Of a DNA stretch of 64,000 nt, positions 26,850 through 43,246 are shown one piece after another. The first letter of the stretch is position 1; each line of letters opens with the position of its first letter. Where the stretch lies: positions 62,001 to 126,000 of the IMG/VR virus record IMGVR_UViG_3300020195_000009, one strand, 5' to 3'. The translations under genes were made by a program, and so were the position numbers. The notes beneath the pieces were generated by a model, which was not told where the DNA came from, did no database searches, and saw only the letters and a program-made list of their open reading frames with translations.

Positions 26850-28013
26850 CTAGAACTGCTGGGGCCTACGAAACCTCGCGTTTATACCAGCCACGGGCGG
26901 CTGCTCGAAGATCCTCTCCGCCTCGGTAGGGTTGACCCTTTCGATGGGCCTTGAAAGCTCCATCGGGGTCCGTTCCATACCGGGCGTAGCGGCGACGATC
27001 TGCGTCCCCCCCTGGACGGCTGGTGGAAGTTGCGTCCCTCCTTGGATGGGTGAGGTTGGCTCGAAGGACTCCCCCTCCATCGCAGCGATCTGAGCCGACT
27101 TCTTCAACACGGCTTGGTTGGCTGGAAGCACTGGATTGGCCTGCATCGCCGGGGATGGGGTAGGCACGGGGACCTCGACCTGACGCTGGTTGAGGGGTTG
27201 CCTTGCCTGCATGATCTCATCAGGAGTCGGCTGGTCCTCCTGAGGTAGCGGTTTAGCGACCCTGGGAGCCGCCTCAACAGGCCTTTGAGCAGGTCGAGCC
27301 CTTGGGGTTGGGGCCGTGGCTGCCGCATCAGAGGTCGGTTCTGGAGCCGCCTCAGGGACGGCGGTTCCTGCGGGAGGCTCGGGCTCCGCAATCTTGGAGA
27401 GCTTCTCGTTGGCAGCCTCCAACTCTACCTTAGAGGTCTGGGTGATGTATCCCAAGTCTTCTCGGATCTTTACCGAGATTTCAACAGGGACATGCCCCTC
27501 AAGCTCCTTGGCTTCCGAAAGGAGGCGGCGGTACTTCTCCTCGGGGGTTTCATCAGGGACCGTAAACTTGACCCCTTCCCCAGCCTCCTTTTCAGCCTTG
27601 GCGATGACGTCGTTGAACTTGCGGAAGGCTACGTCTATAGCCTCACGACCCCAAGACCCAAGGACATAATCACGCACAAAGGCGTGTCTCTCAACCTTCA
27701 CTGTCTTAACGACAAGCTTCTTGGTCTTCTCGTCTACATCCTCAACGTCCACTTCAACGAAATCGACCTGACGGAGATCGACTTCGTTGAACTCGCAGAC
27801 GGCACGGCATAGGTGCTCCCGCTTGAAAGCGTTGAGGTAACCTACGCCCTCGGGGACCTCATCGATCTCCGCGTGTATCGTCTCGTACTCATCTGGACGA
27901 AGGCTTTGGAGGACTATGGAGCACCCACTGATGGTGAGTGGCTCCTCAGACCTGCCAACGTTCTGAGCCTTCTTGAGCGCCTCTGTGATCTTCTTCGCTG
28001 AAAGGGTTGCCAT
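26850..28013 (-). CDS. Putative tail assembly chaperone 1 with Pro-rich disordered C-terminus
   Basis: Between tube and tape measure; acidic N-terminal domain. Confidence 0.6.
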   Translation of the reverse strand: MATLSAKKITEALKKAQNVGRSEEPLTISGCSIVLQSLRPDEYETIHAEIDEVPEGVGYLNAFKREHLCRAVCEFNEVDLRQVDFVEVDVEDVDEKTKKLVVKTVKVERHAFVRDYVLGSWGREAIDVAFRKFNDVIAKAEKEAGEGVKFTVPDETPEEKYRRLLSEAKELEGHVPVEISVKIREDLGYITQTSKVELEAANEKLSKIAEPEPPAGTAVPEAAPEPTSDAAATAPTPRARPAQRPVEAAPRVAKPLPQEDQPTPDEIMQARQPLNQRQVEVPVPTPSPAMQANPVLPANQAVLKKSAQIAAMEGESFEPTSPIQGGTQLPPAVQGGTQIVAATPGMERTPMELSRPIERVNPTEAERIFEQPPVAGINARFRRPQQF

Positions 28014-28188: not shown

Positions 28189-28917
28189 TCAAAGGGCTCC
28201 AGCAGTCTGGTTCGGAGAGGTTCCACCGGAGAAGCGGAGCGAGTAGCCGGCACCTGCGGAGCCGTTGGCTCCGATCGGCGCAAGGCCAGAGTCGATCCAC
28301 TCCCCGTAGTTGGAGAACCCGTCGATGACGTCGGTGACCGTGACAGAGCTGTTCTCCGCTACCATGGCCGCATCCGACGTGAACGAGGCGCTGTAGCTGT
28401 TGAGCCAGCACCCCTCGTAGAACGTGAACAGAGCCTTGATCGCGTTCGTGGCGAGGTTGGCGACGGCCGTGGGTTGTTGAACCGCCTGCTTGGGCGAGAT
28501 CGGAACACCGGCGATGTCATCCCGGCTGCTGATCTCGGAGAAGACAAGCTCTTGCTTGAGATCGAACGGCCAGCGGTGATGCTTGAGGGAGCGGACGAGG
28601 CCCTCCACGCCACCCTTGTAGCCGAGCACCTGCATAATGTTCACCGTGTACAGGAGCGTCCTGTTCAAGGTGAGGGTCATCGGCTCGGTCACACCCGGCA
28701 CCAGTTCGGCAACCTGGTCACCGAAGCCAACACCACGGACCGGATCGATCGTTCGGGATTCATCAAACCCGAACTCCGACACGACGCCGATCTGCTGAAA
28801 CTTCTGTTTGCCAGTCATGTACCCGTAAATCTTGGTCTTTTGACTGACAGCTACACGTGTGTTGGGAGCCGTTCCCATGCGGTAGATGTAAGTGTCGTTT
28901 TCGCGAGGAGATCCCAT
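28189..28917 (-). CDS. Tail tube protein
   Basis: 'IGVVSEF...SRTIDPVRGVGFGDQVAELVPG..EPMTLTLNRTLLY...FYEGCWLNSYSASFTSDAAMVAENSSVTVTDV' is the myovirus tube pattern. Confidence 0.85.
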   Translation of the reverse strand: MGSPRENDTYIYRMGTAPNTRVAVSQKTKIYGYMTGKQKFQQIGVVSEFGFDESRTIDPVRGVGFGDQVAELVPGVTEPMTLTLNRTLLYTVNIMQVLGYKGGVEGLVRSLKHHRWPFDLKQELVFSEISSRDDIAGVPISPKQAVQQPTAVANLATNAIKALFTFYEGCWLNSYSASFTSDAAMVAENSSVTVTDVIDGFSNYGEWIDSGLAPIGANGSAGAGYSLRFSGGTSPNQTAGAL

Positions 28918-28920
28918 GAC

Positions 28921-30474
28921 TTACGTGCTCCCTTTCCCGTCTTGAATGAGACTCTGCTTTGCGGCCCCGAAGTGGGCTTGAATCTTCTCGGCCTTGGAGG
29001 CCAGATCCAAGAGCTGAGGTTGAAGGTCATCGTCGGTCAGGGCCTTCAACTGAAGCATCTCAGCGAGCTTGCTGGAGATGATGTGAAGGTCCATCGTGGC
29101 AACCTTGGTGTTCGTTCGAGGGCTGGTCTCGACGGCCTGAAGAGCAGCCTCAACCTTCGTCAACACGGACGTAGCGAGGGCCTCGTTGAGCGTGGCTGTC
29201 TTGAAGGTGTCTTCTTCCACCTTTGCTTCTTCGCTTGCCGAGAAGTTGGTTGTGGGGCGCCCGCTAGACAGCGTCAGGAAGGCCTTACGGACCCGAATGA
29301 GATAGCCGATGTCCGGGAGGTCAAAGGCGGTCCCAACTCGACCAAGGCCATTCAAAACCCCAAGGAGGCTGAAGAAGACCTTGCCCGTCTTCCCGCTCGT
29401 GTAGGCGGCTTGCGCCTTACGAGCGGCTGCCATGATTTCATCCAAACCTTCGAGGACCATCGCGTCCCCGAACTTGGGGGCGGGATCGAGCCCACCAGGC
29501 ATGGGAACTTCCATCTCTGGTTCGCCGGCAGCCGACTTGAACTTGTCCTTGTTCTTGTCGTTCTGCTTCTTCCACTCATCCGCGTCCTCTTTGGACATGT
29601 TCTCGGTGGGGTCGGCCGGCTTACCCTCCTCGAAGCGGGATTCCTTCTCCTCGCTCTCTTTGCTTTCAGCCCCGGCTGCCTTGAAAGAGAGAACAGCTGA
29701 GGGCGCACTTGCCATGATTTCACCTTCGTCGGCCACCTTGATGTGGCTGTAGTTACCTTCTTCAATGAGAACCTTCTCGTGATCGGCGATGTCCTTCGCG
29801 AGAGCCTCACGGAGCGGCTTCGGGAAGAGCGTCTTAGCCTCTCCTCCGAACTCCTTGGCGTACATCTTGGCGCCTTCATCGACCCAGTACATCCAGAGCT
29901 TGGGGGAAAGGTTGTGGTCGTACTTCCCCGACTTCATCTTGCGAAGGATGTTCTTGAGGATGCCCTCCTTTTGAGAGACGAGACGACCCTCGTTGTCCAT
30001 GTACAGCTCAAGCTCAGTCTTGGCATCCTCGTCGACTGCGCCTTCTTTGGCGATAGGATCTACGGACAACCCGTGAGCAAGTTGCTGGAGGGCCCGTACT
30101 TGAGTAGGCGAGGCAGCATTGGTGATGCCTGCTACCAAAGTCTCCAATGCTGCCAACTTGAACTCGAACGGGTTCATCGTGCTTGCGCCTCTGGGAAGGG
30201 GTCGTGAAACCACAGGGATAAGACGATTCTCATGCACCGCCCATCGGGACCTTTTGGGGCGCAAAAGGTCCTCCATCTCCGTGAGATCCACAGAGAGTTT
30301 CGCCTCCCCTTTGGCGAGGAAAGCATCGAGAACTTTGCGAGCGATGGCCCCGCTCGAAACCAAGCTGGTTACGAACTTCAAAACGGAGACGGACCCGAGC
30401 GTGAAGGTCCTTCCGTCCGGTAGATTCACAAAATCCCGGAAGCCGTCTGTGCCCACTGTCACGAGCATCCCCAT
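28921..30474 (-). CDS. Modular hypothetical protein (candidate internal head protein)
   Basis: 517 aa made of short, unrelated-looking charged modules separated by K-x-A type motifs. Confidence 0.65.
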   Translation of the reverse strand: MGMLVTVGTDGFRDFVNLPDGRTFTLGSVSVLKFVTSLVSSGAIARKVLDAFLAKGEAKLSVDLTEMEDLLRPKRSRWAVHENRLIPVVSRPLPRGASTMNPFEFKLAALETLVAGITNAASPTQVRALQQLAHGLSVDPIAKEGAVDEDAKTELELYMDNEGRLVSQKEGILKNILRKMKSGKYDHNLSPKLWMYWVDEGAKMYAKEFGGEAKTLFPKPLREALAKDIADHEKVLIEEGNYSHIKVADEGEIMASAPSAVLSFKAAGAESKESEEKESRFEEGKPADPTENMSKEDADEWKKQNDKNKDKFKSAAGEPEMEVPMPGGLDPAPKFGDAMVLEGLDEIMAAARKAQAAYTSGKTGKVFFSLLGVLNGLGRVGTAFDLPDIGYLIRVRKAFLTLSSGRPTTNFSASEEAKVEEDTFKTATLNEALATSVLTKVEAALQAVETSPRTNTKVATMDLHIISSKLAEMLQLKALTDDDLQPQLLDLASKAEKIQAHFGAAKQSLIQDGKGST

Positions 30475-30499: not shown

Positions 30500-31375
30500 T
30501 TAGACTCTCAGGAAGACTCCCAACATGTGTGCGACGAGAACCAGGCTCCCGTCCGAGGGTCCGAACAGGTAGTGCCCCTCAACCCTCCAGTTTGCCTCAC
30601 CCCCAGAGAGACGCTCTAGCTCGTTGAGGTGGTAGGCCGCCTGGTTGAGGTCAAAGGCTACCTTGTCACTCTTTCGAGAAGCGATCACGTGGCGGAAGTC
30701 TCGATCCTCCGGTCCAATGAGGACACCACGCAAGAACCCCTGACGGTACAAGCCCCCCCAAGCATCCAAGGAAGGTCTCTTTGCTTCGGCGAAAACGAAC
30801 CCGTTAGTTCCCACCTCAATGATCCTAGGCTTCGTCATCAACGGCCCCACGTTGGGCAGGTTACCGTCGATCACATACTCCCGAATCCACTGAGTAGCCG
30901 ACGCAATGCGCTCCCCCATCTCTTGTTTGGAGACTCCGGTGGGGAAGAAGTCCATCATCCCTTGTAGGAATCTGGCGAGATCGGCATCGACGTGACCCAA
31001 GAAGGGGAGTCCCTTCCGATGAATCAGATCCACGACCGTGACAAGACCGGGGGTAGACGGGTGAATCGCTAGGTCCCGGTGAAGGAACAGAGCCACCGCC
31101 ATGAGGGTGTCGATCCCCTTGATCGACTTCGTTGCGAACGTAAGCGGGAAGGCCGATCCCTCCAGAAGATCCTCGTAGAAGCGGGTCAATGCTCCGGGTT
31201 CGCGAGGTGAAAACTCTTCCCCGTGGTGCTCGTAGGCGAAGTTGGAAGGCTCTTCAACCTGAACCCTTGAGGCGCCGGTCTCAAAAGAGATGGCCTTTTC
31301 AACCAAGACCGGGGCGGTTGAATCAACCAAGACCTGGAAGTGGATCTCAGCCTTTTGTAGCTCCGCCGATGGCAC
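30500..31375 (-). CDS. Hypothetical protein, weak DHH-phosphoesterase-like motif
   Basis: 291 aa; 'AYEHHG' and 'GIDTL' loosely resemble DHH-fold metal-binding motifs; function not established. Confidence 0.5.
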   Translation of the reverse strand: MPSAELQKAEIHFQVLVDSTAPVLVEKAISFETGASRVQVEEPSNFAYEHHGEEFSPREPGALTRFYEDLLEGSAFPLTFATKSIKGIDTLMAVALFLHRDLAIHPSTPGLVTVVDLIHRKGLPFLGHVDADLARFLQGMMDFFPTGVSKQEMGERIASATQWIREYVIDGNLPNVGPLMTKPRIIEVGTNGFVFAEAKRPSLDAWGGLYRQGFLRGVLIGPEDRDFRHVIASRKSDKVAFDLNQAAYHLNELERLSGGEANWRVEGHYLFGPSDGSLVLVAHMLGVFLRV

Positions 31376-31383
31376 GGCTAGAA

Positions 31384-32187
31384 CTACACCGTTCGGTCGT
31401 ACGTGTACCCCGGTTCAATGACGGCCGACTTTTGACAGCCTCCGCAGCAAGGCTGCCCGTCTGCCCGTACCCCTGTACCCCCACAAGCACAAGGCTCGCT
31501 TGCCGTTCGAGTCCGGCCGATCGTCGACACCGTGATGAATGATCCGGTAGCGTTGTCTCGACCCCTCCAGACGATCTCCCCGACCGTCAGGACTTGAGCC
31601 TGCCCACTTTGGCGTTTTGCCAAGACCCTGTCTCCAGGCTTCACATCGCCTTGGATACGAAGACCCCAATCACCGGATTTGAGCTTGGTGAAGGTGGCAT
31701 TGGCCTCTGGGGCGCTTCGCTCAGGCTCGGGTGTTGGCTCTGGCTCTGGATCTCGATCTCGTTGCTCGGGCTCTGGATCGCGTTCTGGCGTAGGTTCGGA
31801 CCGAACCGGGACTCCGGTTGCTTGTGCCTCAAAGACCGCTTCTTTCTCCTCGTACAGCTCAATGAAGTCCTCGACCCGGTCTTGGAGATTGTTCTTCCAA
31901 CCCTGGGTACGTTTGACGATGGGGGCCTTACCCTTCGTCAGAGGCCAAGACCGGCCTCCCTTCCTAGCAAGGAGCTGAATGCGGATAGCATCGGAACCAA
32001 CGTCTGCTCCCGTGTCTCGGCCTGCTCCGATCGAGGTCCAAATGCGGATGATGACGTTCTCGCTCAACGCAAGGTCATAGTAGACCTCACGGCGTTCAGT
32101 TCCCTGCTTAGGGCGAAGTGCTCGCCAGCTACGCAGGATGAACTTCGCCATCTCTTCGAGGGTTACCTCGGTGAATTGAGCGGCCAT
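31384..32187 (-). CDS. Two-domain hypothetical protein with Pro/Glu linker and Cys-rich tail
   Basis: Probable start is the ATG at 32187 (MAAQFTEV), just after the helicase stop, rather than 32343; 'PERDPEPE' repeats; C-terminal 'PCACGG...PCCGGC'. Confidence 0.7.
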   Translation of the reverse strand: MAAQFTEVTLEEMAKFILRSWRALRPKQGTERREVYYDLALSENVIIRIWTSIGAGRDTGADVGSDAIRIQLLARKGGRSWPLTKGKAPIVKRTQGWKNNLQDRVEDFIELYEEKEAVFEAQATGVPVRSEPTPERDPEPEQRDRDPEPEPTPEPERSAPEANATFTKLKSGDWGLRIQGDVKPGDRVLAKRQSGQAQVLTVGEIVWRGRDNATGSFITVSTIGRTRTASEPCACGGTGVRADGQPCCGGCQKSAVIEPGYTYDRTV

Positions 32188-32197
32188 ACCCTGTTTC

Positions 32198-35100
32198 TCA
32201 CGAAGCATTGGACGTCTCCCAGGGGTGTTCCCCGTAAAGATCCATCCCTTCCAGAACGCTTGGATCCGATGACGCTTCCTTGAGGGGGGGCTCTGGCTCC
32301 GTAGGTACTGGAGTGGTTGCCTCTTGCTTGGGTACGTTCTCACCTACAGCCAAGCCGGCCTCCATGACGAACGAACTCACTCCGGCCACCTTACCTCCAA
32401 CTTCCTTAGGGCAAATCACCCGGAGATTCTTGGCTGCTCGGGTCAAGGCCACGTAGGCCAAGCGCCGCTCATCCTCCCAGCGCTCCGCTTCCTTTACCGG
32501 ATCCGGCGGGGGTTCACCAGGTTTTGGCTTGAACTCCATGGGGAACTTACCCTTCGGCATCTGAACGAAGGTGGTTTTCCACTGTGCGCCTTTTGTGGAG
32601 TGGACCGTCCCGAGAAAGACGCCGGGGGGTTTTTGACGCTTCTCCGGGGGAAGAGCGGATTGCTCCTTGTTCCACTTGTCCACGTCCGTCCGAAGGTCCC
32701 TCATCTTGGATGTGTACCGGGCCATTTTGGCCGCGAACCCTTGGGGGGTCGTAGGGGGCGTGATGGCGTCATCTTCGTCCGTTGGATCCGCTTGGGCCAA
32801 CTTGTAAAGGAACGCGACATTCCCAAGACCCTTGGTCTCGTCTTCCTCCTCGTCCTCATCTACAGGCTCTTCATCACCGATAGCATTCCGCAGATTTGCT
32901 TGAAGGCTCGCTCGGAAGGTCTGTTCCCTGAAGACACCGCCTTCTATCGTTACGCCTTCCAACCCCAAGATGTCGTCAAACAACGCCTTCGTGGAATACT
33001 CAGGGTCACTAGACCTCGCCTTGATCTCACCCAGAGCGAGCGCCAGGTCTTGAATCTTCTCCTCAAACTTGAACCCTTTGCCGGTTCGGGTAAGTCGAGC
33101 CAGAGAACTAGCGAGCAACCGGACGAACGTGATGTCTTGGAGGGCCTCGATGGGGTTGATGGACTTGATGGTCTGCCCAACCGTCCTTGCGTAGGTAGAA
33201 AGAGCCTGCTCTACAGCCTCAGGGGCCTTCTTCGGATCCGACAAGAAGAAACGGTTGGGGTTGTTGATGGTCTGCCCCAACGCTTGCTGCATCTTATCGA
33301 AGTCGGAGCCAGTCACAAGCTGGACATAACCTAGAACCGCCTTGGTCTCAGGTGAGCCCAAGAAGGAGCCGGCCCCACGGCGGGCGTAGGGCACCCCTCG
33401 GATAATGCAAGACGTTTCGTAAGCATGCAGCTCCTTGTTCGTACGACACAAGACAGCATGGTCCGTGTAGGACTCCCCGAGGACTTGGTTCTGCTTGATC
33501 TCCTCGATAGCCGTGAGGGCGCCATCCACCTCATCATCGGCAACCCGAACATGAACGCTCCCTACTCCGCGCTTTCGACCAGGAGCCGACACTTGAGGGA
33601 TCGGGACATTCCCATCGTTGTTTGAGATGAGTTGATTTGCTGCATCAACGATCTCCGGCTCACACCGATAGTTAGTGCGGATCACACGAGTCTTCCACCC
33701 CTCCTTTTGGAAGAGTTCCTTGAAGAGAGAGGCTTTGGCACCCTGGAACGAGTTAATCGCCTGCTTGTCATCTCCGACAATCCAGCACGACTTCCCATCC
33801 TCACCATCCGTGATGTGACCAGAGATCATGTCGATGATGTCAGCCATCAACGTGTTTCGGTCTTGGGCTTCATCCACGATGATGTGGTCGAACATCCCCT
33901 GAACCTTGGCCTGGACGGCTGGATTTCGCTTCAGGATGTCCCTGAAGATTTTGAGCATGTCAGTGAAGTCCCCAAGACGCTCCGCCTTGGAACCATGCTT
34001 AGCCATGAAGCTCTCGTAGGCCTTTGACGGACAAGGAGGCTTCCAACCCTTACCGTTGGTCCCCTTGAGACCCTCGTAGATTTCGTACCATTTGGCTTGG
34101 GCAGCCTCTTCGGAGCTTGTCGCTTGCTCTGCGGCCATCGCAGGGGAGATGTCGTTACCCGACCATTTCGCCTTGCTCATGACGGCGTTCTTCAACTTGG
34201 GCGGGGGCTCCGTCTTACCGTAGCAATCTTCCCAAATCTTCTGAACAGCATAGGCTACGTTGTTACCGCCCTCTACGAACCCGGCCCCAAGGGCCGCCTT
34301 CTCCACGGGGGTGCCGAACTCCGTGATGAAGCGTCGGAACAGGGAGTGCATCGTTCCAACAGACATCTGTTGGAGGGCGTCTCCACCGGCTGCTCGGCCG
34401 ATCTTTTCCTTCAGTTCCGTGGCGGCCTGAGTATTGAAACTGGTGACCATGATACGACTCGGGTTGACCCGACGATCACGTACCAAATAGGCAACACGAG
34501 CCACCAACGTTGTCGACTTTCCGGCTCCGGCGCCAGCAAAGACCCCAACCCGTCCATCCGTGAGAGCCGCTGCCCGTTGCTCATCATCAAGCCCGCGAAG
34601 GGGCTCTGGGATGTTCTGAGAGTTGGAGGGATCGCTGGTAGCTGCCGCTGCCGCTGCCACCGCAATACCAACGACCTGAGACTTCGTAAGGGGTTCATCT
34701 AGCTCCCCCGCTCGGTCCATCGACTGACGAGCCGCTGCGGTAGCCTCATCCTGAACCTTCAAGAGCTGCTGGGTCTGAGCCTCTTGGGCTTGCTTCGACG
34801 CATCCGCTCCAGAGGATGCCATTTGGTCGATGTTTTGCTCCAGGAGCTTACCCTTCTGGTCTTGAGCTTCCTTGGAGCCAGCCTCGACAACATTGGCTGG
34901 GAGCTGACCTGAGACGGCTGTTTTCGCCGCTAGTTCAATCCAACCAGCAAGACGCATGTTACGGAAGGTGAGCTTAGCGAAGAGGTCGAGCGCAGCATCC
35001 GCGTTGTCCATCTGAGCGGCGGTCATCGCCTCTCGGACCTGCTTCAAAGCCCTATTGGACTGGAAGACGCCCCGCATGGTGGCGGCACCTCCCCGTGAGA

Positions 35101-35482
35101 GCAACGTACGCAAACCAAGAGCCCGACGACCCACACCTTGGGGGTTTGTTGCCTTCACTTGAAGGTACTTCAGAAGCATGCGCTTGTGGGTCTCAGTAGC
35201 GAGATGCTCCTGAATGAACCCACGGATGCTTTCCAGCTCGGAATCTGCGTTACGAAGGAGCCTGAGCCCCTTCGCAATCACCTCATCGAGGGGGTCTTCT
35301 TGGCTCGTAGCCTCTTCGACGTACCGAATGTAGGTGTCGATGGCGAGGAGGAAAATCACGTACTCGGCGACTTGAAGCTCACCGATCGGCTCGTCATCCC
35401 CATCAACGTCTTCAACCGCCTCGACAGTTCGGGCGGGACGGGTTGCTTCCAAAGCCTGGCGAACTGCCTGTCGGACATCCAT
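32198..35482 (-). CDS. UvrD/Rep/PcrA-family SF1 helicase with ~290-aa N-terminal extension
   Basis: Q motif 'LDDEQRAA', Walker A 'AGAGAGKST', Walker B 'IIVDEAQD', 'VGDDKQAINSFQGA', 'TNYRC', 'TVHSTKGAQW', 'ERRLAYVALTRA'. Confidence 0.95.
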   Translation of the reverse strand: MDVRQAVRQALEATRPARTVEAVEDVDGDDEPIGELQVAEYVIFLLAIDTYIRYVEEATSQEDPLDEVIAKGLRLLRNADSELESIRGFIQEHLATETHKRMLLKYLQVKATNPQGVGRRALGLRTLLSRGGAATMRGVFQSNRALKQVREAMTAAQMDNADAALDLFAKLTFRNMRLAGWIELAAKTAVSGQLPANVVEAGSKEAQDQKGKLLEQNIDQMASSGADASKQAQEAQTQQLLKVQDEATAAARQSMDRAGELDEPLTKSQVVGIAVAAAAAATSDPSNSQNIPEPLRGLDDEQRAAALTDGRVGVFAGAGAGKSTTLVARVAYLVRDRRVNPSRIMVTSFNTQAATELKEKIGRAAGGDALQQMSVGTMHSLFRRFITEFGTPVEKAALGAGFVEGGNNVAYAVQKIWEDCYGKTEPPPKLKNAVMSKAKWSGNDISPAMAAEQATSSEEAAQAKWYEIYEGLKGTNGKGWKPPCPSKAYESFMAKHGSKAERLGDFTDMLKIFRDILKRNPAVQAKVQGMFDHIIVDEAQDRNTLMADIIDMISGHITDGEDGKSCWIVGDDKQAINSFQGAKASLFKELFQKEGWKTRVIRTNYRCEPEIVDAANQLISNNDGNVPIPQVSAPGRKRGVGSVHVRVADDEVDGALTAIEEIKQNQVLGESYTDHAVLCRTNKELHAYETSCIIRGVPYARRGAGSFLGSPETKAVLGYVQLVTGSDFDKMQQALGQTINNPNRFFLSDPKKAPEAVEQALSTYARTVGQTIKSINPIEALQDITFVRLLASSLARLTRTGKGFKFEEKIQDLALALGEIKARSSDPEYSTKALFDDILGLEGVTIEGGVFREQTFRASLQANLRNAIGDEEPVDEDEEEDETKGLGNVAFLYKLAQADPTDEDDAITPPTTPQGFAAKMARYTSKMRDLRTDVDKWNKEQSALPPEKRQKPPGVFLGTVHSTKGAQWKTTFVQMPKGKFPMEFKPKPGEPPPDPVKEAERWEDERRLAYVALTRAAKNLRVICPKEVGGKVAGVSSFVMEAGLAVGENVPKQEATTPVPTEPEPPLKEASSDPSVLEGMDLYGEHPWETSNAS

Positions 35483-35519
35483 GCTGGTAACCCGTTCGGA
35501 TAAGAAGTTCAGGTGTGGG

Positions 35520-35858: not shown

Positions 35859-35880
35859 GAGAGCGGGCTTACAAGTTACT

Positions 35881-35928
35881 TAACGCCTGACGGTATCGGG
35901 AGCTTACCTCACCGATGCCGTCAGGTTA
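35881..35928. other. Long imperfect inverted repeat downstream of the sheath gene
   Basis: CCTGACGGTATCGG...CCGATGCCGTCAGG arms (14 bp, one G-T pair); no U-tract. Confidence 0.65.
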
Positions 35929-35949
35929 TACCAGCCCGTTTACCCGCTG

Positions 35950-38900
35950 CTAGATTCTAGCTCTGAGGTTGAATGTGAGCACAAGGTAGAGGAGCGGGAA
36001 GATCGGCTGGTAGAAGGCCTCTGCCCTCAAGATGGTCGGGTCCTCCGTGTCGACCTGAGCCGAGATGCCCGTGAAGGCCGCCACGATCTCCTGCTGGATG
36101 AGCTGCTTGAAGAGTGAGGTCATCGAGACCTCGACTTCATTGACTCGGGAGGACAGGATCTTGGTGCCGACGAAGGCATCGAGAACCGCCCTGGAGTTGA
36201 TCGACACGAAGTCGGCGATCTGGGTGACCGTCGGAAGCCTCGTGAGCACCGACGTCATGTTCGTGGTGAGACCCTGGCGAACCCGAACGATCGGGTCGAG
36301 GTCTTCCAGGAGAGTCACACCAGCCGTTGCCGTCTGGTTCAGCTCCACCGCATCGAGGATACGTGGGATTCGGGTGAACCCCTGAACCCTTCGACGGGTG
36401 TAAGGAGTCGCCACGTCAATCGCAGGGCTGCATACGGCACCTGCAACGGCCGCCGCGAAGAACGATCCGTCCACCAAGGTCTCGAAGGTCTCCCCCAGCT
36501 CGTTGGAGAGGGTGATGACCGAAGAGTCCGGGTAGAAGGCAACCATTCGCTGGCTGACAAGACCCCGAGCGACCGTTTGGGCCGTCGTGGGAGTCGTCCC
36601 ACTTGCGAACCCGATGAATCCCATCCGTTCCGACTGGTTGCGGATGTTGCTCTGGATCTCGCAGTGTTGGGTGAGGAACGAGTAGACCGCCGTGTCCGTG
36701 GCGAGCGGGATGATGACGTCTGGCTTGATGTTGCCAGGTAGCGGGGTCCCTAGCGCTTGGATCGCGTCGATGAACGACTGAGCCGAGGCTTGATTCGTAT
36801 TCGGAACCTTGAGGACCTGCTTGACTCCAACGAGGACGGCCCCATTGAGAATTGTCAGGAAGGCTCCGAGCGTGACCCGATTCTCAGCCGAGAGTGTCCC
36901 GAAGTTGGCCTGGATCGTCTTGAACTGACGGAAGATCCGGGTGGAAAAGTCCTGCTTCAAGAAGCGGTACGAGATGAAGTAGAAGTCCCCGTTCTTGGGC
37001 TCCACTCCACTCGGGTTGAACGTCTGAAGCGTTGCCGTATCGTTGATCCCGACATTCACCGTGTTGGTAACGATGGTCTCCAACCCAGGAATCGAGAGGT
37101 ACGGTACGGACGGGTTGACGTTCCACGTTGGAGAGACATCCATCGTGAAGAAGCCGCCCGTGTTGTACGATCCATCTGCGCTCGGAAGAACCGTGAACCG
37201 AAGGCCAGACCTGACGTCCGTGTACGTCTGACCAGGGATACCCGTACCCGCCGACCCGATGGGGTTGTTCGAGGTGACGACAAAGTTGTCGTAGACGCCT
37301 TCTCCACTGTCCCCATCCGTACCTGGAACAATCTGCGTTCCAGTCAGGACGTTGAAAGCCGAGTTGGTTCCCGTCACGAAGGCGATTGCAGACGTTGTAC
37401 CCAGCACGACGGACTCGATGGTGAGGTACGTCTGAGCGTCGATGACCGATGGGTAGGTCACGGCACCCGTCGCACTGGGCGTCGGAGGGGACCAGGTGGA
37501 AACCGCAAAGCCTATGGTATCCATGAGGCGATCGACAACCTCTTGGACTGACACTCGGGTCTGGCTTGCGAAGTCGCCTTCGTTGAAGCCGAAAATCGCA
37601 TTGGCCGAGCCGTTGAGGATGAGGACAGCGCTCTGGTCGCTGTTGGTGTTCGAGGTGATGCGAATCTTGTTGAGGTTTGCACCCGTTCCAACGCTGGCCG
37701 TTCCTTGAGAGGAGATGGCCGCGTTGATATCGATCACAACCAGAGCTGCCGTTGTCGACGCTGGGTTGACGATGGCAGTGAAGTCGATCCCGTTGACCCG
37801 GACCTTGAACTCATCACTCACCCCACTCACGACAGAGAAGGGTTGAGCGAGAGTACCGAGAATCGTAGCCGCCTTGTTGACGGCTCCGGTTGTACCGTCT
37901 GCCCGCTGGAAGGTCGTGAACCCCAGCGTCGTCTCCGCAGTACCCTGACGGATAGCGGAGTAAGACGTGTGGTCGAACCCTGCCGGAAGGGCGGTTGGGA
38001 CTGCGTAGCTCCGAAGCACGAAGAACGTGCTGGAAGCACCCGGCCCAGGGATCGGCGTGAACATGTTGTTCGGGGCCGTCCCAAGGAACGTGGCGTTCGC
38101 ATCGATGACTGCATTGACTGCGGTTGCAATCGCAGCCGGAGTGATCGCCGGACCTGCTGGAAGCGTGACGGTGAGATCGACACCGTCGATGGTGATCTCC
38201 AACAAGTCGTTGACGGCTGCTGTGATGAGAACGCCACCACCGCTGAGGGGGACAGCTTGGCTGACGAGATAGCCGCGAGTAGCGACATTCAAGTTGGTAG
38301 CGAGCGTTGATCCGCCGTTGAGAACCGTTCGCCAGGTTGCCGACGAAGGACCATAGAAGGAGAACGGTTGGGCTCCCTTGTTCGTGTACACGGCATTCGT
38401 AGCCGCACTCACTCCGAAGGTGACCGTGACGGTCTCAGAAACCGGCGTACCCCCAAAGTGGAAGACATCCGGGATCTGCTCCACCCCACGAGGCCACTGG
38501 ACCGTGTCCACAAGGCCGCCGCCCTTCGACCCGAACCGGACTTGAAGAACGTTCGAGTTGAAGAGGGAACTGAAAACCTCGAACTGACCCGTTCCGATGG
38601 GACCGGGAGTCTTGTTGGTGAGGATGTACGTGTCGTCCGCGATGCGGTTGTAATAGAAGGTGGCGAACGCCTTATAGTCAGGCGGGACCGCATCCTTCAA
38701 GGTGATCTTGCGGGATACCCCATCGACAGCCAAGACCTTGGCGACTGGACGATTGAGGGCGTCCCGGAGGTTTCGACCCACACGGACCACAACGAGGTCC
38801 GGGCGGTTGGAGATGAGGTCTTGGCGCTGGTTGGTAGCCGCAAAGAACAGATCCAACCCAAGGACCGTGTCACGACCGTTGCCGGTCGTCGGGTTCGTGG

Positions 38901-40248
38901 GGAGGAGGAACTCCGTCGTGGAGGTCCTAGCTGGGACAACCGAGTTGTCGATGAACCGAGCACACTCCGCAAGCCAGAGCTTGTCGTCCACCAAGGTGGG
39001 ACCGATCTGACTGTCATCAAACAGCTCAGCGCCAGGGGTGCGCAACGTCGAAGAGACGGCGTAGCTGGTACCCCAATGGATGATCGACACGTCCGGGGAC
39101 GGGTTCGACACCACGAAGTCCTGGTTTTGAATGAAGTCTGCACGACCGGGAGAGATGCCGGCCCGGATCACGTTGGTGACCAGAGTGTTGGGGAGGTAGT
39201 CGAACGTATCCTGCCAGGTGTTGGCGAAGTACGTGATGAGGACTTCCGAGCCAGGAGCAGGAGCCGTGGGCAACGTAACCGTGCCGTTCGTCCCATCGAC
39301 GGAAGCCGGAATCACCTGGACTCCGTTGACCTTGGCGACAACCTTGCTCGGGTCCGTCGTTGTAAGGCCAGCGCTGGTCCCATCTACAATGGGGCGCTGG
39401 AAGACCTTGTAGGTAGCGTTACGGGCCGTCTTTTGACCGTTGACCAGACCAAGGATACCGTTCGCGTTGCCATCCCCAATTTCAATTGAGGTAGCCGCGT
39501 TGAACTGAAGATGCAGAGTGCCGTCGTTGGCCGTGAAGACACTCGTAGTGAGACCGACGATCGCGGCTGCATCGATCTGGGTCTTGAGGGACGATGCGGT
39601 TGCCGCAGGGGCAACCGTGAACGTAACCGATACCTCGGCTCCCCCGTTCACCTTGATCCTGAAGTTGTCGTTCGCCCCAGCGGTGATGTTGAACGTCTGG
39701 TAGCCGGGAGTGACGATTTCTGCCGTCGTCGTCGTCACCTGGTCGGACAAGTCGTCCGTGAAGGCCGTGTCGCCCCGGTGGAAGAAGTAGGTGCAACGAA
39801 CGACGTCCGTTGGTTGCGGAGGGACTTGGAGGATGACTTCTCCGGTTGAGCCTCGGACGGCTCCAACCGCCACCGGGATCCCGTTGACCGTCACGGTCAC
39901 GGATCGGACGTCGTTGGTCGTTCGACCGAATCCTTGCCCATCTACGATGGGGAAATTCCGAATCTTGAACCGCGTCCGAGTCCCATCATTCACCCCAAGA
40001 ATGGGGTTGGCCGGGTTGGAGTCATCGACAATCCAACGGACCGTGATGTCCTCGTTGACGATCTGCTGGTCAAGAGTCGATGACGAACCTCTCACCATCT
40101 CCAGGTCGAGCTGCTCCAGCTCTTCCTGACCCACACCAATGACGGTGGGGATGCGAAGGCCTGCGATGAGCGCAGCCACATTCGCTTCCGTCAAAGTACG
40201 AGAGTAAACGCCAGGAGGAACGTACGTAGTGAAGGGGCCCAACGCCAT
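35950..40248 (-). CDS. Contractile tail sheath protein with large insertion domains
   Basis: N-terminal 'YVPPGVYSRT'; C-terminal 'VRVRQGLTT...RLPTVTQIADFV...AFVGTK...YQPIFPLLYLVLTF' are sheath signatures. Confidence 0.92.
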   Translation of the reverse strand: MALGPFTTYVPPGVYSRTLTEANVAALIAGLRIPTVIGVGQEELEQLDLEMVRGSSSTLDQQIVNEDITVRWIVDDSNPANPILGVNDGTRTRFKIRNFPIVDGQGFGRTTNDVRSVTVTVNGIPVAVGAVRGSTGEVILQVPPQPTDVVRCTYFFHRGDTAFTDDLSDQVTTTTAEIVTPGYQTFNITAGANDNFRIKVNGGAEVSVTFTVAPAATASSLKTQIDAAAIVGLTTSVFTANDGTLHLQFNAATSIEIGDGNANGILGLVNGQKTARNATYKVFQRPIVDGTSAGLTTTDPSKVVAKVNGVQVIPASVDGTNGTVTLPTAPAPGSEVLITYFANTWQDTFDYLPNTLVTNVIRAGISPGRADFIQNQDFVVSNPSPDVSIIHWGTSYAVSSTLRTPGAELFDDSQIGPTLVDDKLWLAECARFIDNSVVPARTSTTEFLLPTNPTTGNGRDTVLGLDLFFAATNQRQDLISNRPDLVVVRVGRNLRDALNRPVAKVLAVDGVSRKITLKDAVPPDYKAFATFYYNRIADDTYILTNKTPGPIGTGQFEVFSSLFNSNVLQVRFGSKGGGLVDTVQWPRGVEQIPDVFHFGGTPVSETVTVTFGVSAATNAVYTNKGAQPFSFYGPSSATWRTVLNGGSTLATNLNVATRGYLVSQAVPLSGGGVLITAAVNDLLEITIDGVDLTVTLPAGPAITPAAIATAVNAVIDANATFLGTAPNNMFTPIPGPGASSTFFVLRSYAVPTALPAGFDHTSYSAIRQGTAETTLGFTTFQRADGTTGAVNKAATILGTLAQPFSVVSGVSDEFKVRVNGIDFTAIVNPASTTAALVVIDINAAISSQGTASVGTGANLNKIRITSNTNSDQSAVLILNGSANAIFGFNEGDFASQTRVSVQEVVDRLMDTIGFAVSTWSPPTPSATGAVTYPSVIDAQTYLTIESVVLGTTSAIAFVTGTNSAFNVLTGTQIVPGTDGDSGEGVYDNFVVTSNNPIGSAGTGIPGQTYTDVRSGLRFTVLPSADGSYNTGGFFTMDVSPTWNVNPSVPYLSIPGLETIVTNTVNVGINDTATLQTFNPSGVEPKNGDFYFISYRFLKQDFSTRIFRQFKTIQANFGTLSAENRVTLGAFLTILNGAVLVGVKQVLKVPNTNQASAQSFIDAIQALGTPLPGNIKPDVIIPLATDTAVYSFLTQHCEIQSNIRNQSERMGFIGFASGTTPTTAQTVARGLVSQRMVAFYPDSSVITLSNELGETFETLVDGSFFAAAVAGAVCSPAIDVATPYTRRRVQGFTRIPRILDAVELNQTATAGVTLLEDLDPIVRVRQGLTTNMTSVLTRLPTVTQIADFVSINSRAVLDAFVGTKILSSRVNEVEVSMTSLFKQLIQQEIVAAFTGISAQVDTEDPTILRAEAFYQPIFPLLYLVLTFNLRARI

Positions 40249-40422: not shown

Positions 40423-40857
40423 TCAGGGCTTGGGTACGATGGGTTGGTTCTCCATCGTAACGGCGTAATCGACGAGATTTTCGCGAGCTGTCTTACCCCC
40501 AGGGCTCATCGCATCGTACTCAACAAAGCCATCCCCGTCGGAGCGGAGTAGGGCGCCGGACCCACCTTGCTCTCGGACTTGCTTCTTGACCTTCTCTCGC
40601 TCTCGGTACTCCGACCAACGTTCTTCCGCACTACGACCCACGATCTTGTCCGCCGTAGGGTAGTCATGGTCGTGGACGCCTGAGTTCGCTGCCGCTCCGT
40701 TCCCAGCCGAGAAGGCATGGGAGAAACCGTTACCCATAAAAAGGCGAGGAGCCTCCTCTTTACAGGCAGGACATGGATGTGTGGGGTGATCCCCCATTTT
40801 CAACGTTCGCTCAAACCTGGTCGAGCAACTCTGGCAATCAAAGTCGTACTTCGGCAC
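40423..40857 (-). CDS. FmdB-family zinc-ribbon protein
   Basis: 'MPKYDFDCQSCSTRFE...PCPAC' matches the CxxC-CxxC FmdB pattern; GTG start with GGAGG RBS. Confidence 0.85.
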   Translation of the reverse strand: MPKYDFDCQSCSTRFERTLKMGDHPTHPCPACKEEAPRLFMGNGFSHAFSAGNGAAANSGVHDHDYPTADKIVGRSAEERWSEYREREKVKKQVREQGGSGALLRSDGDGFVEYDAMSPGGKTARENLVDYAVTMENQPIVPKP

Positions 40858-40880: not shown

Positions 40881-42077
40881 TTATGCGATTCGTTCGTAGA
40901 AGTTATTGCGTCCCACGATGACAGGCACCGTGGCAAAGAAGAGCCCAGCAGGAGAGGGCTCATCCAGTCTTGTGGGTCTCCCACGCCGATCTGTGGTCAC
41001 GGCAGCTTCGGCGGCTTTTGTCGCAGTCACCGCCTTGCTGATTGTGAATGGGAGAGGGATGTGAATCTCCCAGTCCGCTTGAAGCTGCAACGACAAGGAG
41101 GCGTTGTAGAAGTAGAGGTCTCCCGTCTCATCGTAGGTCTCCTCTGCCTCGCCACCCATTGACACATCGATGATCTCGATTCCCTCAAAGGAGAGGGACG
41201 CTCGTTTCTCCCCCCAAAGGGACATGACGAGAAAGTCCGCAATCTCCTCCATTTGGATGGGGTCTTGAGAGATGACATCAAGGTCAAACGAGGCTTCAAA
41301 CCGCCCACCAAAGGCGTTGGCCGCATCCACCCGATCGTCGTAAACAACGATCGCCATCTTGTCCCCGGGCTTGCCTCGTTTACCGAAGGCCATGACCACC
41401 CCTGGAAGGGTGGTCCAGTCCGCAGTGTTCCAGCGCCACTCAATAGGACCGATAGAAGGGGCCGCGTAACGATAATCTGCGGTCAAGATAGAGTTGGGTT
41501 GCAACCTGGTCTTGATCTTGATGGCCCCAGTCGCGTAGTTGACCTCAAAGTCCCTACCTTCAATGAGAAGAATTTGACGGTCTTCCCAAATGCGAACCGT
41601 TCCCGCAACGGGTTTTTGCGAAAACTGGGCCTCGGTTTCGATACCCGACCGAACCTTGAGTAGAGGCTCATCCGTCGCTGTCAAAAGAGGGTCGATGACG
41701 AACGTTCCCAGCGTCCCTTCCATGGTGGGGGCCGTCAAGCATTCGATGTAGTAGACCCCAGAGGCCGTTGGCATCCGGTCATCGTTTTTCCGAACGCAGG
41801 GGAGGTCTTCCTTGGCCCATTCGAGAAGGTAGGCCGGGGAGTCCAGGTACGCGAGCATCACGTGACTTGCGACCACACCCACAAAGTTCTCACTGGATAG
41901 CTGGACCTTGTTGGCGCTGGATCCCTTGACGACGATTCCGAACTGGGGACGCTCATCAAAGGCATATTTATTCTGAATCCACGGTACGATCTTCTGGTAA
42001 ACGGGGTGACGGGAGAAGCTGTCTTGTAGCTCAAGGATGAGACGCCTCTTGAGGCTACTAATCAAATAGTAGTACAT
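40881..42077 (-). CDS. Putative tail terminator/tail completion protein
   Basis: Located just before the sheath; 'FEASFDLDVISQDPIQMEEIADFL...YFYNASLSLQLQADW' fits the terminator fold pattern. Confidence 0.6.
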   Translation of the reverse strand: MYYYLISSLKRRLILELQDSFSRHPVYQKIVPWIQNKYAFDERPQFGIVVKGSSANKVQLSSENFVGVVASHVMLAYLDSPAYLLEWAKEDLPCVRKNDDRMPTASGVYYIECLTAPTMEGTLGTFVIDPLLTATDEPLLKVRSGIETEAQFSQKPVAGTVRIWEDRQILLIEGRDFEVNYATGAIKIKTRLQPNSILTADYRYAAPSIGPIEWRWNTADWTTLPGVVMAFGKRGKPGDKMAIVVYDDRVDAANAFGGRFEASFDLDVISQDPIQMEEIADFLVMSLWGEKRASLSFEGIEIIDVSMGGEAEETYDETGDLYFYNASLSLQLQADWEIHIPLPFTISKAVTATKAAEAAVTTDRRGRPTRLDEPSPAGLFFATVPVIVGRNNFYERIA

Positions 42078-42205: not shown

Positions 42206-43246
42206 TCACCCGTCGTGTTCCTGCGTAGCGAGCACGAGGAGACCTTCGGCAACCGCCGTCATCGGGTCTTTCGCCTGACGAATCTCAGAGATTTCGATAG
42301 GGAAACCCTTCTTCTTGATGGCCATGAACTCCTCTTTGAATAGGTCCATGAACCCTTCGGCTAGAGAGGTCCCACCGCTGACCACGAAGGGGACGGCATC
42401 AGGGAGGGTGACCTTCCCCTGCTCCCGCCTGAACTGAATCGCGATCTTCTCCAGGCAATAGGAGATGAGGCTTCGGATGTAGAGAGCGATGGCTTCCGCG
42501 TCCCGGTTACCCTTTCCAGGGTTGGCGAGGTTGAAGCCGCCCTTCTCCTTGGTCGAGCACATCCGAGTCGCCGTTGAACCGACGGCCTTGGCGGCATGAA
42601 GGTCGATCCAATCACCCCCACGAGCGATGGAGAAGTCCATCCCCATCATCGTCTGGTAGGAAAGGGCAACGTTGCACATGCCCGAGCCGAACGAGACAGC
42701 CAGCCCGGAAAACTGCTCTTCCGCACATTGGCTGTAGATGATGGCCATCGCCTCGTTCATCGGGTGCGGGGTATATCGATGCTCCGTGATGATCTGCTTG
42801 AAGACCTCACGGTGATAGGCCACGTCCTGATCGGGGACGTCGATGGGTTCGGCCGGCACGCTGTAGTAGCAGTGCTCGCCAACCTCAAGGGCTTCTCCAA
42901 GAACTTGGAGAACCATCATCGAGAGGATCTCTTGCGACTCCAGCTCACCGGGGGCGATGAGGCCCTTTGCTAAGGGCCGGCGAACTTCCCTCTTGAAGAG
43001 GTTCGCCATGTTGAGGGCACTGTCCCCGATGACGATGAGCTGTCCGTCCTTCTCGACGTAATTCACCTTGGACATCTTGAGCGCCTTCTTGGCGTCGATC
43101 TCAAGGTCGATGAAAGCGTCTCGGACCCTCTTCGTTTTCACGTCCGTCCCGTACTGCCGGGCGGACACGAGGTTCATGGTGCCTACGTCTAGCCCGACCC
43201 CCAGCACAGCATTCGATTCATTTGCCATATTCATATCCTTTTTCAT
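42206..43246 (-). CDS. Actin-fold ATPase (MreB/ParM/FtsA superfamily)
   Basis: Phosphate-1 'GLDVGTMN', connect-1 'MNEAMA', phosphate-2 'VSFGSGMCN', 'GGDWID', adenosine 'VVSGGTS', connect-2 'DPMTAVAEG'. Start may be the ATG at 43228. Confidence 0.9.
   Translation of the reverse strand: MKKDMNMANESNAVLGVGLDVGTMNLVSARQYGTDVKTKRVRDAFIDLEIDAKKALKMSKVNYVEKDGQLIVIGDSALNMANLFKREVRRPLAKGLIAPGELESQEILSMMVLQVLGEALEVGEHCYYSVPAEPIDVPDQDVAYHREVFKQIITEHRYTPHPMNEAMAIIYSQCAEEQFSGLAVSFGSGMCNVALSYQTMMGMDFSIARGGDWIDLHAAKAVGSTATRMCSTKEKGGFNLANPGKGNRDAEAIALYIRSLISYCLEKIAIQFRREQGKVTLPDAVPFVVSGGTSLAEGFMDLFKEEFMAIKKKGFPIEISEIRQAKDPMTAVAEGLLVLATQEHDG

What the first reader, a model, noticed from the sequence alone, without database searches (positions are those of the whole stretch)
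32198..35482. UvrD-family helicase with a ~290-aa extra N-terminal domain placed between tail sheath and tail tube genes
Seen: intact SF1A motifs plus a helical N-terminal extension of unknown type. Sheath and tube, usually adjacent in myoviruses, are separated by about 7 kb containing five genes including this one. A TTCTTAT motif lies 18 nt upstream. Inference: a late-expressed, possibly virion-packaged helicase acting in packaging, ejection or immediately after infection.
Basis: partly seen in the sequence, partly recalled or inferred. Interest (0 to 1): 0.65.

Follow-up and report, generated by a model that had tools for sequence, protein, structure and literature searches.

The report
Two-part helicase inside phage tail operon
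A huge phage carries an intact UvrD-type DNA helicase, wedged between its tail sheath and tail tube genes, whose unique N-terminal domain is predicted to dock a small basic protein encoded right behind it; this is a new variant of a known enzyme, and nothing shows that it travels in the virion.

Summary
ORF 32198..35482 (-) encodes a 1094-aa SF1A helicase with all motifs intact and a roughly 300-aa N-terminal extension. It lies in a 7,032-bp interval with four other ORFs, between a 1432-aa tail sheath gene and a 242-aa tail tube gene. TTCTTAT sits 17 nt before the ATG.

New findings:
- **N-domain.** Residues 30-192 form a confident all-helical domain. A profile search of 1.84 billion proteins finds it only at the N-terminus of this helicase family (77 clusters, many with inteins). 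No fold match was found.
- **Partner gene.** A small basic protein is encoded directly downstream, overlapping the helicase stop, in all 10 loci with DNA, whatever the context. A complex model docks it on the N-domain (ipSAE 0.84, best control 0.00).
- **Operon.** A hairpin follows the sheath gene. Helicase, partner, two unknown genes and the tube are packed with gaps of 25 nt or less.
- **Motif.** TTCTTAT belongs to a YTYTTAT family enriched upstream of structural-region genes.
- **Placement.** It is clade-specific. Sheath and tube are adjacent in LR745208 and near-adjacent in phage G. Several homologues sit in non-tail contexts.

Late co-expression is plausible; virion packaging is unsupported. 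I rate it a new variant of a known kind, of moderate interest.

The parts
32198..35482 (-). UvrD/Rep/PcrA-like SF1A helicase, 1094 aa (P0001)
   Evidence: Pfam UvrD-helicase 1.7e-41 and UvrD_C 3.8e-24; PHROG 1967 DNA helicase 5.5e-78; PDB UvrD 3e-34, Rep, PcrA; motifs intact
34907..35395 (-). Family-specific all-helical N-domain (residues 30-192), predicted docking site for the partner
   Evidence: pLDDT about 90, nine helices. Only 77 hits among 1.84 billion proteins, all N-terminal; every long hit scanned is a UvrD helicase. No fold match in PDB, BFVD or ESM Atlas. Interface residues 49-161 in the complex model
34700..34897 (-). Variable Ala/Gln/Glu-rich helical hairpin (residues 196-261) with an acidic tip, low confidence
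   Evidence: pLDDT 47-64; poorly conserved in alignment A5; only generic coiled-coil matches
32414..34591 (-). Helicase core (residues 298-1023) with motifs Q to VI
31384..32208 (-). Partner protein, 274 aa: basic alpha+beta core (about 1-135), Pro/Glu linker and an optional C-terminal beta domain; its start overlaps the helicase stop by 11 nt
   Evidence: Directly downstream of the helicase in all 10 loci with DNA; model; core pI about 9-9.6 in 7 of 8; complex ipSAE 0.84 against 0.00 for the best control
35500..35506 (-). TTCTTAT, one copy of a YTYTTAT promoter-like motif family
   Evidence: L004 has TTCTTAT about 20 nt before its helicase ATG
35860..35955 (-). Strong hairpin just after the sheath stop codon (terminator or attenuator-like)
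   Evidence: dG -44.3 kcal/mol, z -4.5, 0 of 200 shuffles as stable; hairpins well below the shuffled mean at the same place in L002, L003, L005, L007, L008 and L009
35520..35855 (-). Small ORF, 111 aa, not conserved in relatives; lies in the variable slot between sheath and helicase
35950..40248 (-). Tail sheath, 1432 aa, with large inserted repeat domains
30500..31375 (-). Conserved 291-aa protein of unknown function
   Evidence: Orthologues in 7 relatives' loci, all near the helicase; L004 lacks one. No Pfam, PHROG, NCBIfam or phage-database match
28921..30474 (-). 517-aa protein; only the first 130-250 residues or so are conserved; unknown function
28189..28917 (-). Tail tube protein, 242 aa; the most conserved gene of the block (67-80% identity)
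26850..28013 (-). Tail assembly chaperone-like protein, 387 aa
   Evidence: The family profile hits phage G gp181 (tail assembly chaperone) at 4e-8
40881..42077 (-). Tail terminator-like protein, 398 aa
   Evidence: BLASTP to Tunturi_5 gp324 'tail terminator', 1.5e-12

Best explanation
This is a two-subunit phage DNA helicase that is probably made late; it is not a tail part.

Shown:
- The 1094-aa protein is an intact SF1A (UvrD/Rep/PcrA-like) motor.
- It carries a 163-residue helical N-domain found in no other protein family.
- The gene directly downstream always travels with the helicase.

Predicted: that downstream protein, which has a small basic alpha+beta core, docks on the N-domain.

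Inferred:
- The partner is a DNA-binding or targeting subunit that activates or directs the motor, as accessory proteins do for other SF1A helicases.
- In this clade the helicase-partner pair, with two unknown genes, was inserted between the sheath and tube genes.
- A hairpin after the sheath gene insulates the cassette. It has its own promoter-like YTYTTAT element and runs without gaps into the tube gene, so it is made together with tail proteins.
- Its likely job is DNA work needed late in infection: recombination-dependent replication, and clearing branches or bound proteins from the very large concatemer before packaging. T4's late UvsW helicase with its small partner UvsW.1 is the analogy.
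For: - **Helicase identity and motifs:**
- **N-domain:** a confident model. Only 77 clusters among 1.84 billion proteins carry it, always at the N-terminus. All six long hits scanned are UvrD helicases, five of them with inteins.
- **Partner linkage:** the partner lies directly downstream in the window, L002, L003, L004, L005/L006, L007, L008, L009, L018 and LR745208. In the window its start overlaps the helicase stop. No partner lies beside the Tunturi_5 helicase, which lacks the N-domain.
- **Complex model:** ipSAE 0.84 (runs 0.86, 0.83, 0.84) against 0.00 for the best of 3 controls. Runs agree in at least 94% of contacts and the partner pLDDT is at least 80. The mark was reached by 58 of 80 solved complexes and 2 of 110 mismatched pairs; these counts hold only roughly because my own alignments were used. 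The interface includes conserved residues on both sides.
- **Partner chemistry:** the core pI is about 9-9.6 in 7 of 8 orthologues.
- **Operon:** a hairpin after the sheath, and gaps of -11, 8, 25 and 3 nt from the helicase to the tube.
- **Motif:** enriched in structural-region intergenic DNA.
- **Insertion:** sheath and tube are adjacent in LR745208 and near-adjacent in phage G.
- **Analogy:** T4 UvsW and UvsW.1 as cited in PMC7824862.
Against: - There are no expression data. The promoter and terminator calls rest on sequence only, and internal promoters cannot be excluded.
- The complex is a model score, not a measurement, and used shallow alignments (25 and 8 rows).
- The partner's fold matches are non-specific (best Z 7.0), so DNA binding is inferred from charge alone.
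- The DNA polymerase A and DnaB-like genes lie about 70 kb away on the same strand. Strand orientation therefore does not separate late genes from replication genes.
- The biochemical role (recombination, packaging preparation) is an analogy and was not tested.
Confidence: 0.55

Rival explanations
1. Virion-packaged or tail-delivered helicase. The helicase is loaded into particles and enters the cell with the DNA, helping to internalise or protect the huge genome. The small partner would act as a loading chaperone.
For: The gene sits in the tail operon and is conserved there across much of the clade. Tunturi_5 has a protein annotated 'DNA ejection protein' in the same sheath-tube slot. Several type III secretion chaperones appear among the partner's weak fold matches (Z 5.2-5.9).
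Against: No proteome or expression data exist. The helicase lies outside the tail module in L004, P0110, P0116, LR745208 and Tunturi_5. Tunturi_5 gp328 is unrelated to it. The partner is basic, unlike the acidic secretion chaperones, and the fold matches lie in the range expected by chance. SF1A enzymes move on single-stranded DNA, which is a poor fit for pulling in duplex DNA (established knowledge of the family). The two jumbo-phage virion proteome papers read do not report a virion helicase.
Confidence: 0.1
2. RNA-polymerase-directed motor (HelD-like or UvrD-like). The hairpin at residues 196-261, with its acidic tip, would enter the secondary channel of the host or phage RNA polymerase. 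The helicase would then strip or backtrack polymerases from phage DNA late in infection.
For: A helical hairpin with conserved acidic residues at its tip lies just before domain 1A, as in HelD (recalled knowledge, a lead only). Weak NCBIfam hits to HelD (2.6e-7) and HelR (6.3e-6) exist.
Against: The hairpin is modelled at low confidence (pLDDT 47-64) and is poorly conserved. The core is far closer to UvrD, PcrA and Rep (about 1e-51) than to HelD. The hairpin finds only generic coiled-coil matches. No RNA polymerase interaction was tested.
Confidence: 0.1
3. Incidental cargo. The sheath-tube interval is an insertion hot spot, and the helicase-partner module is a general replication or repair or anti-defence accessory. 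On this reading its position and timing carry no functional meaning.
For: The slot between sheath and helicase is variable, holding 0 to 8 extra genes including an HNH gene nearby in L007. Tunturi_5 carries different cargo in the same slot. Homologues occur in several unrelated contexts. Inteins are frequent: about 27 of 75 hits are 1350 aa or longer.
Against: The placement and the tight packing with the tube gene are kept across lineages with only 44-75% helicase identity. A structural-region motif precedes the gene.
Confidence: 0.2

Closest known systems
UvrD / PcrA / Rep (SF1A DNA helicases)
   Same: All conserved motifs are present and both Pfam UvrD domains match. The best PDB sequence matches are E. 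coli UvrD (3e-34), Rep (9e-31), mycobacterial UvrD1 and PcrA. As in those enzymes, an accessory partner is proposed to direct or activate the motor.
   Different: It scores far below the NCBIfam equivalog cut-offs (about 175 bits against 911-1144), so it is not an orthologue of any of them. It has about 300 extra N-terminal residues with a domain seen nowhere else and a longer, acidic region between residues 745 and 1000. It lacks a recognisable C-terminal Tudor-type tail.
Phage T4 UvsW helicase with UvsW.1
   Same: A phage helicase paired with a small protein encoded immediately downstream; PMC7824862 calls UvsW.1 a potential DNA-binding partner. T4's late expression of UvsW and its role in recombination-dependent replication are recalled knowledge.
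   Different: UvsW is an SF2 helicase and UvsW.1 is a three-helix protein. Here the motor is SF1A and the partner is an alpha+beta sandwich. This is an analogy, not homology.
HelD / helicase IV (RNA polymerase recycling motors)
   Same: A UvrD-like core preceded by an N-terminal extension of about 200-300 residues that contains a helical hairpin.
   Different: Sequence similarity to HelD is marginal (28.9 bits against a cut-off of 419). The extension here is dominated by a globular helical domain that is predicted to bind a partner protein.
UvrD-like helicases of SPO1-like Bacillus phages and phage G (PHROG 1967)
   Same: These are the closest matches among deposited phage genomes, at 27-29% identity over the core.
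   Different: Their matches cover only residues of about 295-746. None aligns to the N-domain region.

Membership tests
SF1A UvrD/Rep/PcrA-like helicases | Conserved motifs Q, I, Ia, II, III, IV, V and VI | tested here: met
   Q at 298, I at 317, II at 534, III at 570, V at 959 and VI at 1011 by pattern. Ia (around 346) and IV (around 602) were read in the translation.
SF1A UvrD/Rep/PcrA-like helicases | Pfam UvrD-helicase and UvrD_C domains above the gathering score | tested here: met
   143.2 bits (cut-off 23) and 86.2 bits (cut-off 25.6).
SF1A UvrD/Rep/PcrA-like helicases | ATP-driven 3'-5' translocation and unwinding | not testable with these tools
   Needs a biochemical assay.
Orthologue of bacterial UvrD, PcrA or Rep (NCBIfam equivalogs) | Score above the curated equivalog cut-off | tested here: not met
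   162-176 bits against cut-offs of 911-1144.
HelD / HelR RNA polymerase recycling motors | Family-level sequence match and an N-terminal secondary-channel arm | tested here: not met
   HelD 28.9 bits against a cut-off of 419; HelR 24.7 against 750. The hairpin is modelled at low confidence only.
Contractile-tail sheath (the neighbour at 35950..40248) | Sequence similarity of the C-terminal core to known sheath proteins | tested here: met
   tblastn to annotated sheaths at 3e-45, 4e-25 and 3e-13. The language-model hits are all sheath families. The Pfam sheath models themselves found nothing.
Tail tube (the neighbour at 28189..28917) | Similarity to tube proteins, and a position before the tail chaperones and tape measure | tested here: inconclusive
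   It matches virion structural proteins of Tunturi_5 and phage G (gp179/gp180) that occupy the tube position. It scores 0.96 to a Phi812_tail_tube cluster. The next gene resembles phage G's tail chaperone. There is no direct match to a solved tube, and the fold was not modelled.
Virion-packaged (ejected) proteins | Presence in purified particles | not testable with these tools
   No cultured member of the clade and no proteome; no RNA run either.

The most novel reading that the evidence does not exclude
The helicase-partner complex is a tail-operon-encoded protein that is loaded into virions and delivered with the DNA. There it would act as a motor or guard for the entering genome of about 300-480 kb, with the small partner serving as its loading chaperone.
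Probability: 0.07. Interest if true: 0.85.

Novelty: new variant of a known kind. Interest (0 to 1): 0.45.

Why it matters
SF1A helicases are usually weak alone and are switched on or aimed by partners. Here a whole clade of huge phages (contigs up to 469 kb) has fixed a private solution: a domain found nowhere else, and a co-translated small protein predicted to bind it. That gives a clean, testable pair for studying how accessory subunits control UvrD-type motors.

It is also a marker gene for this poorly known phage group. Its frequent inteins suggest that the gene is important to these phages.

The tail-operon placement, insulated by a hairpin and preceded by a structural-region motif, offers a first handle on late-gene regulation in phages that have no cultured representative. 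It also shows that tail gene blocks of huge phages hold enzymes and cytoskeletal genes. Position alone should therefore not be read as a virion role.

Tried and rejected
- **Nucleotide search:** no close genome in the phage collection.
- **Family scans of neighbours:** Pfam, PHROG and NCBIfam gave almost nothing.
- **Pfam sheath and T4 tube models:** nothing in the 286-kb record. PF26461 is not in the local library.
- **PDB profile searches:** the sheath, tube, 432-aa and partner families found nothing useful.
- **N-terminal fold searches:** Foldseek against PDB and BFVD and the ESM Atlas shape search gave no match. The VIA wide search was filled by the generic hairpin 196-261. The N-domain alone was not folded separately, so 'no known fold' means only 'none found'.
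- **Partner fold searches:** only common alpha+beta arrangements, best Z 7.0. I do not file it with type III secretion chaperones or YbjN.
- **HelD-like reading:** considered and ranked low.
- **Tunturi_5 gp328 ('DNA ejection protein'):** not related to the helicase.
- **LR745208 N-terminal extension:** not detectably homologous to the N-domain by HMM or hhalign.
- **The 291-aa and 517-aa proteins:** no relatives in deposited phages or in distant relatives' tail loci.
- **Sigma-70 promoter and terminator scan:** uninformative. There is no hairpin after the tube gene.
- **Sequencing runs:** no RNA run holds the stretch.
- **GGTGTA motif:** not partitioned between genome regions once intergenic length is taken into account.
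- **L004's genome:** could not be searched for its sheath and tube, because the record is not held.
Full report
**Where the window lies.** The window is bases 62001-126000 of a 286,005-bp IMG/VR virus record, which CheckV rates at 60% complete. GC content is 57%. The best holder of the sequence is a microbial mat metagenome. Almost every gene in the window is on the minus strand. No deposited phage is close at the nucleotide level.

**The observation.**
- ORF 32198..35482 (-) gives a 1094-aa protein.
- Pfam places UvrD-helicase at 300-590 (1.7e-41) and UvrD_C from 602, with nothing before residue 300. PHROG 1967 'DNA helicase' matches at 5.5e-78.
- The best solved relatives by sequence are UvrD (3e-34), Rep, UvrD1 and PcrA.
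- NCBIfam scores for UvrD, PcrA and Rep are about 1e-51 but far below the equivalog cut-offs. HelD scores only 2.6e-7.
- Motifs Q, I, II, III, V and VI were found by pattern. Ia and IV are visible in the translation.
- The helicase claim and the 'extra N-terminal region' claim are therefore correct.

**The neighbours.**
- Pfam sheath and T4 tube models found nothing in the record, and profile searches of PDB sequences found nothing.
- tblastn against annotated phages settled the sheath. The last 416 residues of the 1432-aa protein (35950..40248) match the tail sheaths of Tunturiibacter phage Tunturi_5 (3e-45), Bacillus phage G (4e-25) and cluster C mycobacteriophages (3e-13). The language-model search gave only sheath families.
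- The 242-aa protein (28189..28917) matches Tunturi_5 gp329 (1e-58) and phage G gp180/gp179. In phage G these sit between the sheath and the tail assembly chaperones and tape measure. Its nearest named cluster is Phi812_tail_tube.
- The next gene's family profile hits phage G's tail chaperone gp181 at 4e-8.
- The 398-aa protein upstream of the sheath resembles Tunturi_5's 'tail terminator'.
- Tunturi 5 is a cultured contractile-tailed jumbo phage of Acidobacteriota (PMC11924767).
- The order here is therefore: terminator, zinc-ribbon protein, sheath, five ORFs in 7,032 bp, tube, chaperones, then a long tape-measure-like gene.

**The N-terminal extension.**
- Forty-two full-length homologues share it. 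An alignment of 25 shows a well conserved block at about 30-192, a variable Ala/Gln/Glu-rich stretch at about 195-260, and a conserved linker into motif Q.
- AlphaFold models residues 34-190 as a nine-helix domain at pLDDT of about 90. Residues 196-261 form a low-confidence helical hairpin.
- Foldseek against PDB and BFVD and the ESM Atlas shape search gave no match. The VIA wide search only matched the hairpin to generic coiled coils. I did not fold the domain alone, so I claim only that no known fold was found.
- A profile of the domain searched against 1.84 billion representative proteins found only 77 hits, each at the N-terminus. The six long hits scanned were all UvrD helicases, five of them with inteins. 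About 27 of 75 hits are 1350 aa or longer. Short hits are probably fragments.
- The domain is thus private to this helicase family.

**The partner.**
- The gene after the helicase (31384..32208, 274 aa by my gene model) overlaps the helicase stop by 11 nt.
- Its roughly 125-residue core is conserved and lies directly downstream of the helicase in every locus for which DNA was available: L002, L003, L004, L005/L006, L007, L008 and L009, L018 (1e-45) and LR745208 (1e-8). L004 and LR745208 are in different genomic contexts.
- Tunturi_5's helicase is 686 aa without the N-domain, and no partner homologue lies beside it.
- The partner model is an alpha / five-strand sheet / two-helix sandwich, then a Pro/Glu linker and a small beta domain that only some orthologues have.
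- Fold matches are weak and mixed: best Z 7.0, with Mediator Med17, YbjN-like proteins, secretion chaperones and frataxin among them.
- The core is basic, with pI of about 9-9.6 in seven of eight orthologues.

**The complex model.** I tested helicase residues 1-310 against partner residues 1-135.
- ipSAE was 0.84 (runs 0.86, 0.83, 0.84) against 0.00 for the best of three controls.
- Runs agreed in at least 94% of contacts, and the partner pLDDT was at least 80.
- In the tool's calibration, 58 of 80 solved complexes and 2 of 110 mismatched pairs reached the mark. These counts hold only roughly here, because my own alignments were used.
- The interface lies on N-domain residues 49-62, 98-105, 115-130 and 157-161 and on partner residues 22-32 and 109-121. 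It includes conserved positions on both sides.
- This is a model-based prediction, not a measurement.

**Transcription signals.**
- A hairpin of -44.3 kcal/mol (z -4.5) follows the sheath stop.
- Different sequences form comparable hairpins at the same place in six other loci. The one in L005 is followed by a T-run.
- After that hairpin come a non-conserved 111-aa ORF, a 37-nt gap containing TTCTTAT 17 nt before the ATG, and then the helicase, partner, 291-aa gene, 517-aa gene and tube, with gaps of -11, 8, 25 and 3 nt.
- No sigma-70-like promoter or further motif copy lies inside this run.
- TTCTTAT, CTTTTAT and TCTTATG are the most enriched 7-mers in upstream regions genome-wide.
- The YTYTTAT family occurs 9 times in 3,476 bp of upstream intergenic DNA in the head-tail region, against 6 times in 18,149 bp elsewhere (p = 1.4e-4). 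The head-tail region was defined with the major head protein and protease homologues found.
- L004 has the same heptamer about 20 nt before its helicase. L002, L003 and L007 have TTTCTAT.
- I read this as a phage promoter element of the structural regulon, and the helicase as co-transcribed with the tube. That is an inference from sequence only; no RNA run holds the region.

**How general is the placement?**
- The order sheath, variable slot, helicase, partner, about 285 aa, about 300 aa, tube is kept in L002, L003, L005, L007, L008 and L009. Helicase identity across these is 43-75%.
- The slot between sheath and helicase holds 0 to 8 extra genes.
- In LR745208, sheath and tube are 680 bp apart and the helicase-partner pair lies elsewhere.
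- In phage G one structural gene separates sheath and tube.
- In Tunturi_5 the slot holds unrelated genes.
- L004, P0110 and P0116 place the helicase among non-tail genes.
- The pair is therefore older than its insertion into the tail operon, and the insertion is clade-specific.
- DNA polymerase A and a DnaB-like helicase lie about 70 kb away on the same strand.

**Interpretation.**
- The best reading is a two-subunit SF1A helicase that is made with the tail proteins and works on DNA late in infection.
- T4 UvsW with its small neighbour UvsW.1 is the nearest analogy (PMC7824862). It is not homologous.
- Virion packaging remains possible but has no support.
- A HelD-like reading of the hairpin is a weak lead.
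- The finding is a new variant of a known kind: a known motor with a new private domain and a new obligate-looking partner, restricted to huge phages.

Noticed in passing
window 42206..43246 (-): A 346-aa actin-fold protein matches Pfam Volactin (8.3e-71), a family named after a Haloferax volcanii cell-shape protein. It is conserved at 62-70% identity next to the tail terminator gene in relatives and at 51% in LR745208. An actin-like cytoskeletal gene inside a huge-phage tail block deserves its own look.
   Followed up: partly
G000 outside the window, window coordinates about +152,000 to +210,000 (+ strand): At least seven small plus-strand genes share a fixed leader: GGTTGATTCC or GTTGAATC, then about 12-15 nt, then GTGTTCTT exactly 5 nt before the ATG. 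This is a likely second promoter or leader class, perhaps for early genes.
   Followed up: no
homologues P0010, P0042, P0055, P0098, P0105, P0116 and others: Many homologues of the helicase carry one or more inteins (Intein_splicing, LAGLIDADG_3, Hint). About 27 of 75 profile hits are 1350 aa or longer. The window's copy has none.
   Followed up: partly
window 35950..40248 (-): The sheath is 1432 aa, 1204-1665 aa in its closest relatives against 587 aa in phage G. It has about 1000 residues of inserted, internally repeated domains before the conserved C-terminal core, and a weak DUF2460 match at residues 67-157.
   Followed up: no
window 43274..43978 (-), 40423..40857 (-), 55795..56736 (-), 19014..21092 (-): Other non-structural-looking genes sit in the structural block: a weak ferritin-like match, a zinc-ribbon protein (3.8e-10), a lipase or alpha/beta-hydrolase (3.5e-9) and a 692-aa protein with an SLT lytic transglycosylase domain.
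   Followed up: no
whole record G000: GGTGTA lies 8-15 nt before many start codons across the genome. It may be an unusual ribosome-binding or promoter element. It is not partitioned between genome regions once intergenic length is considered.
   Followed up: partly
window 31384..31880 (-) (partner residues about 167-274): The partner's C-terminal beta domain, followed by a Cys-rich tail, is present only in the window, L002, L003 and L009. It is absent from L004, L005, L007, L008 and L018. Its fold was not searched separately.
   Followed up: no
L013 / L016 (LR745208, about 300.4-305.7 kb): This 485-kb uncultured phage has a 1748-aa UvrD-like frame with an N-terminal helical extension of similar length. 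The extension is not detectably homologous to the N-domain, yet a partner homologue follows it. It may be a highly diverged version of the same two-part design.
   Followed up: partly
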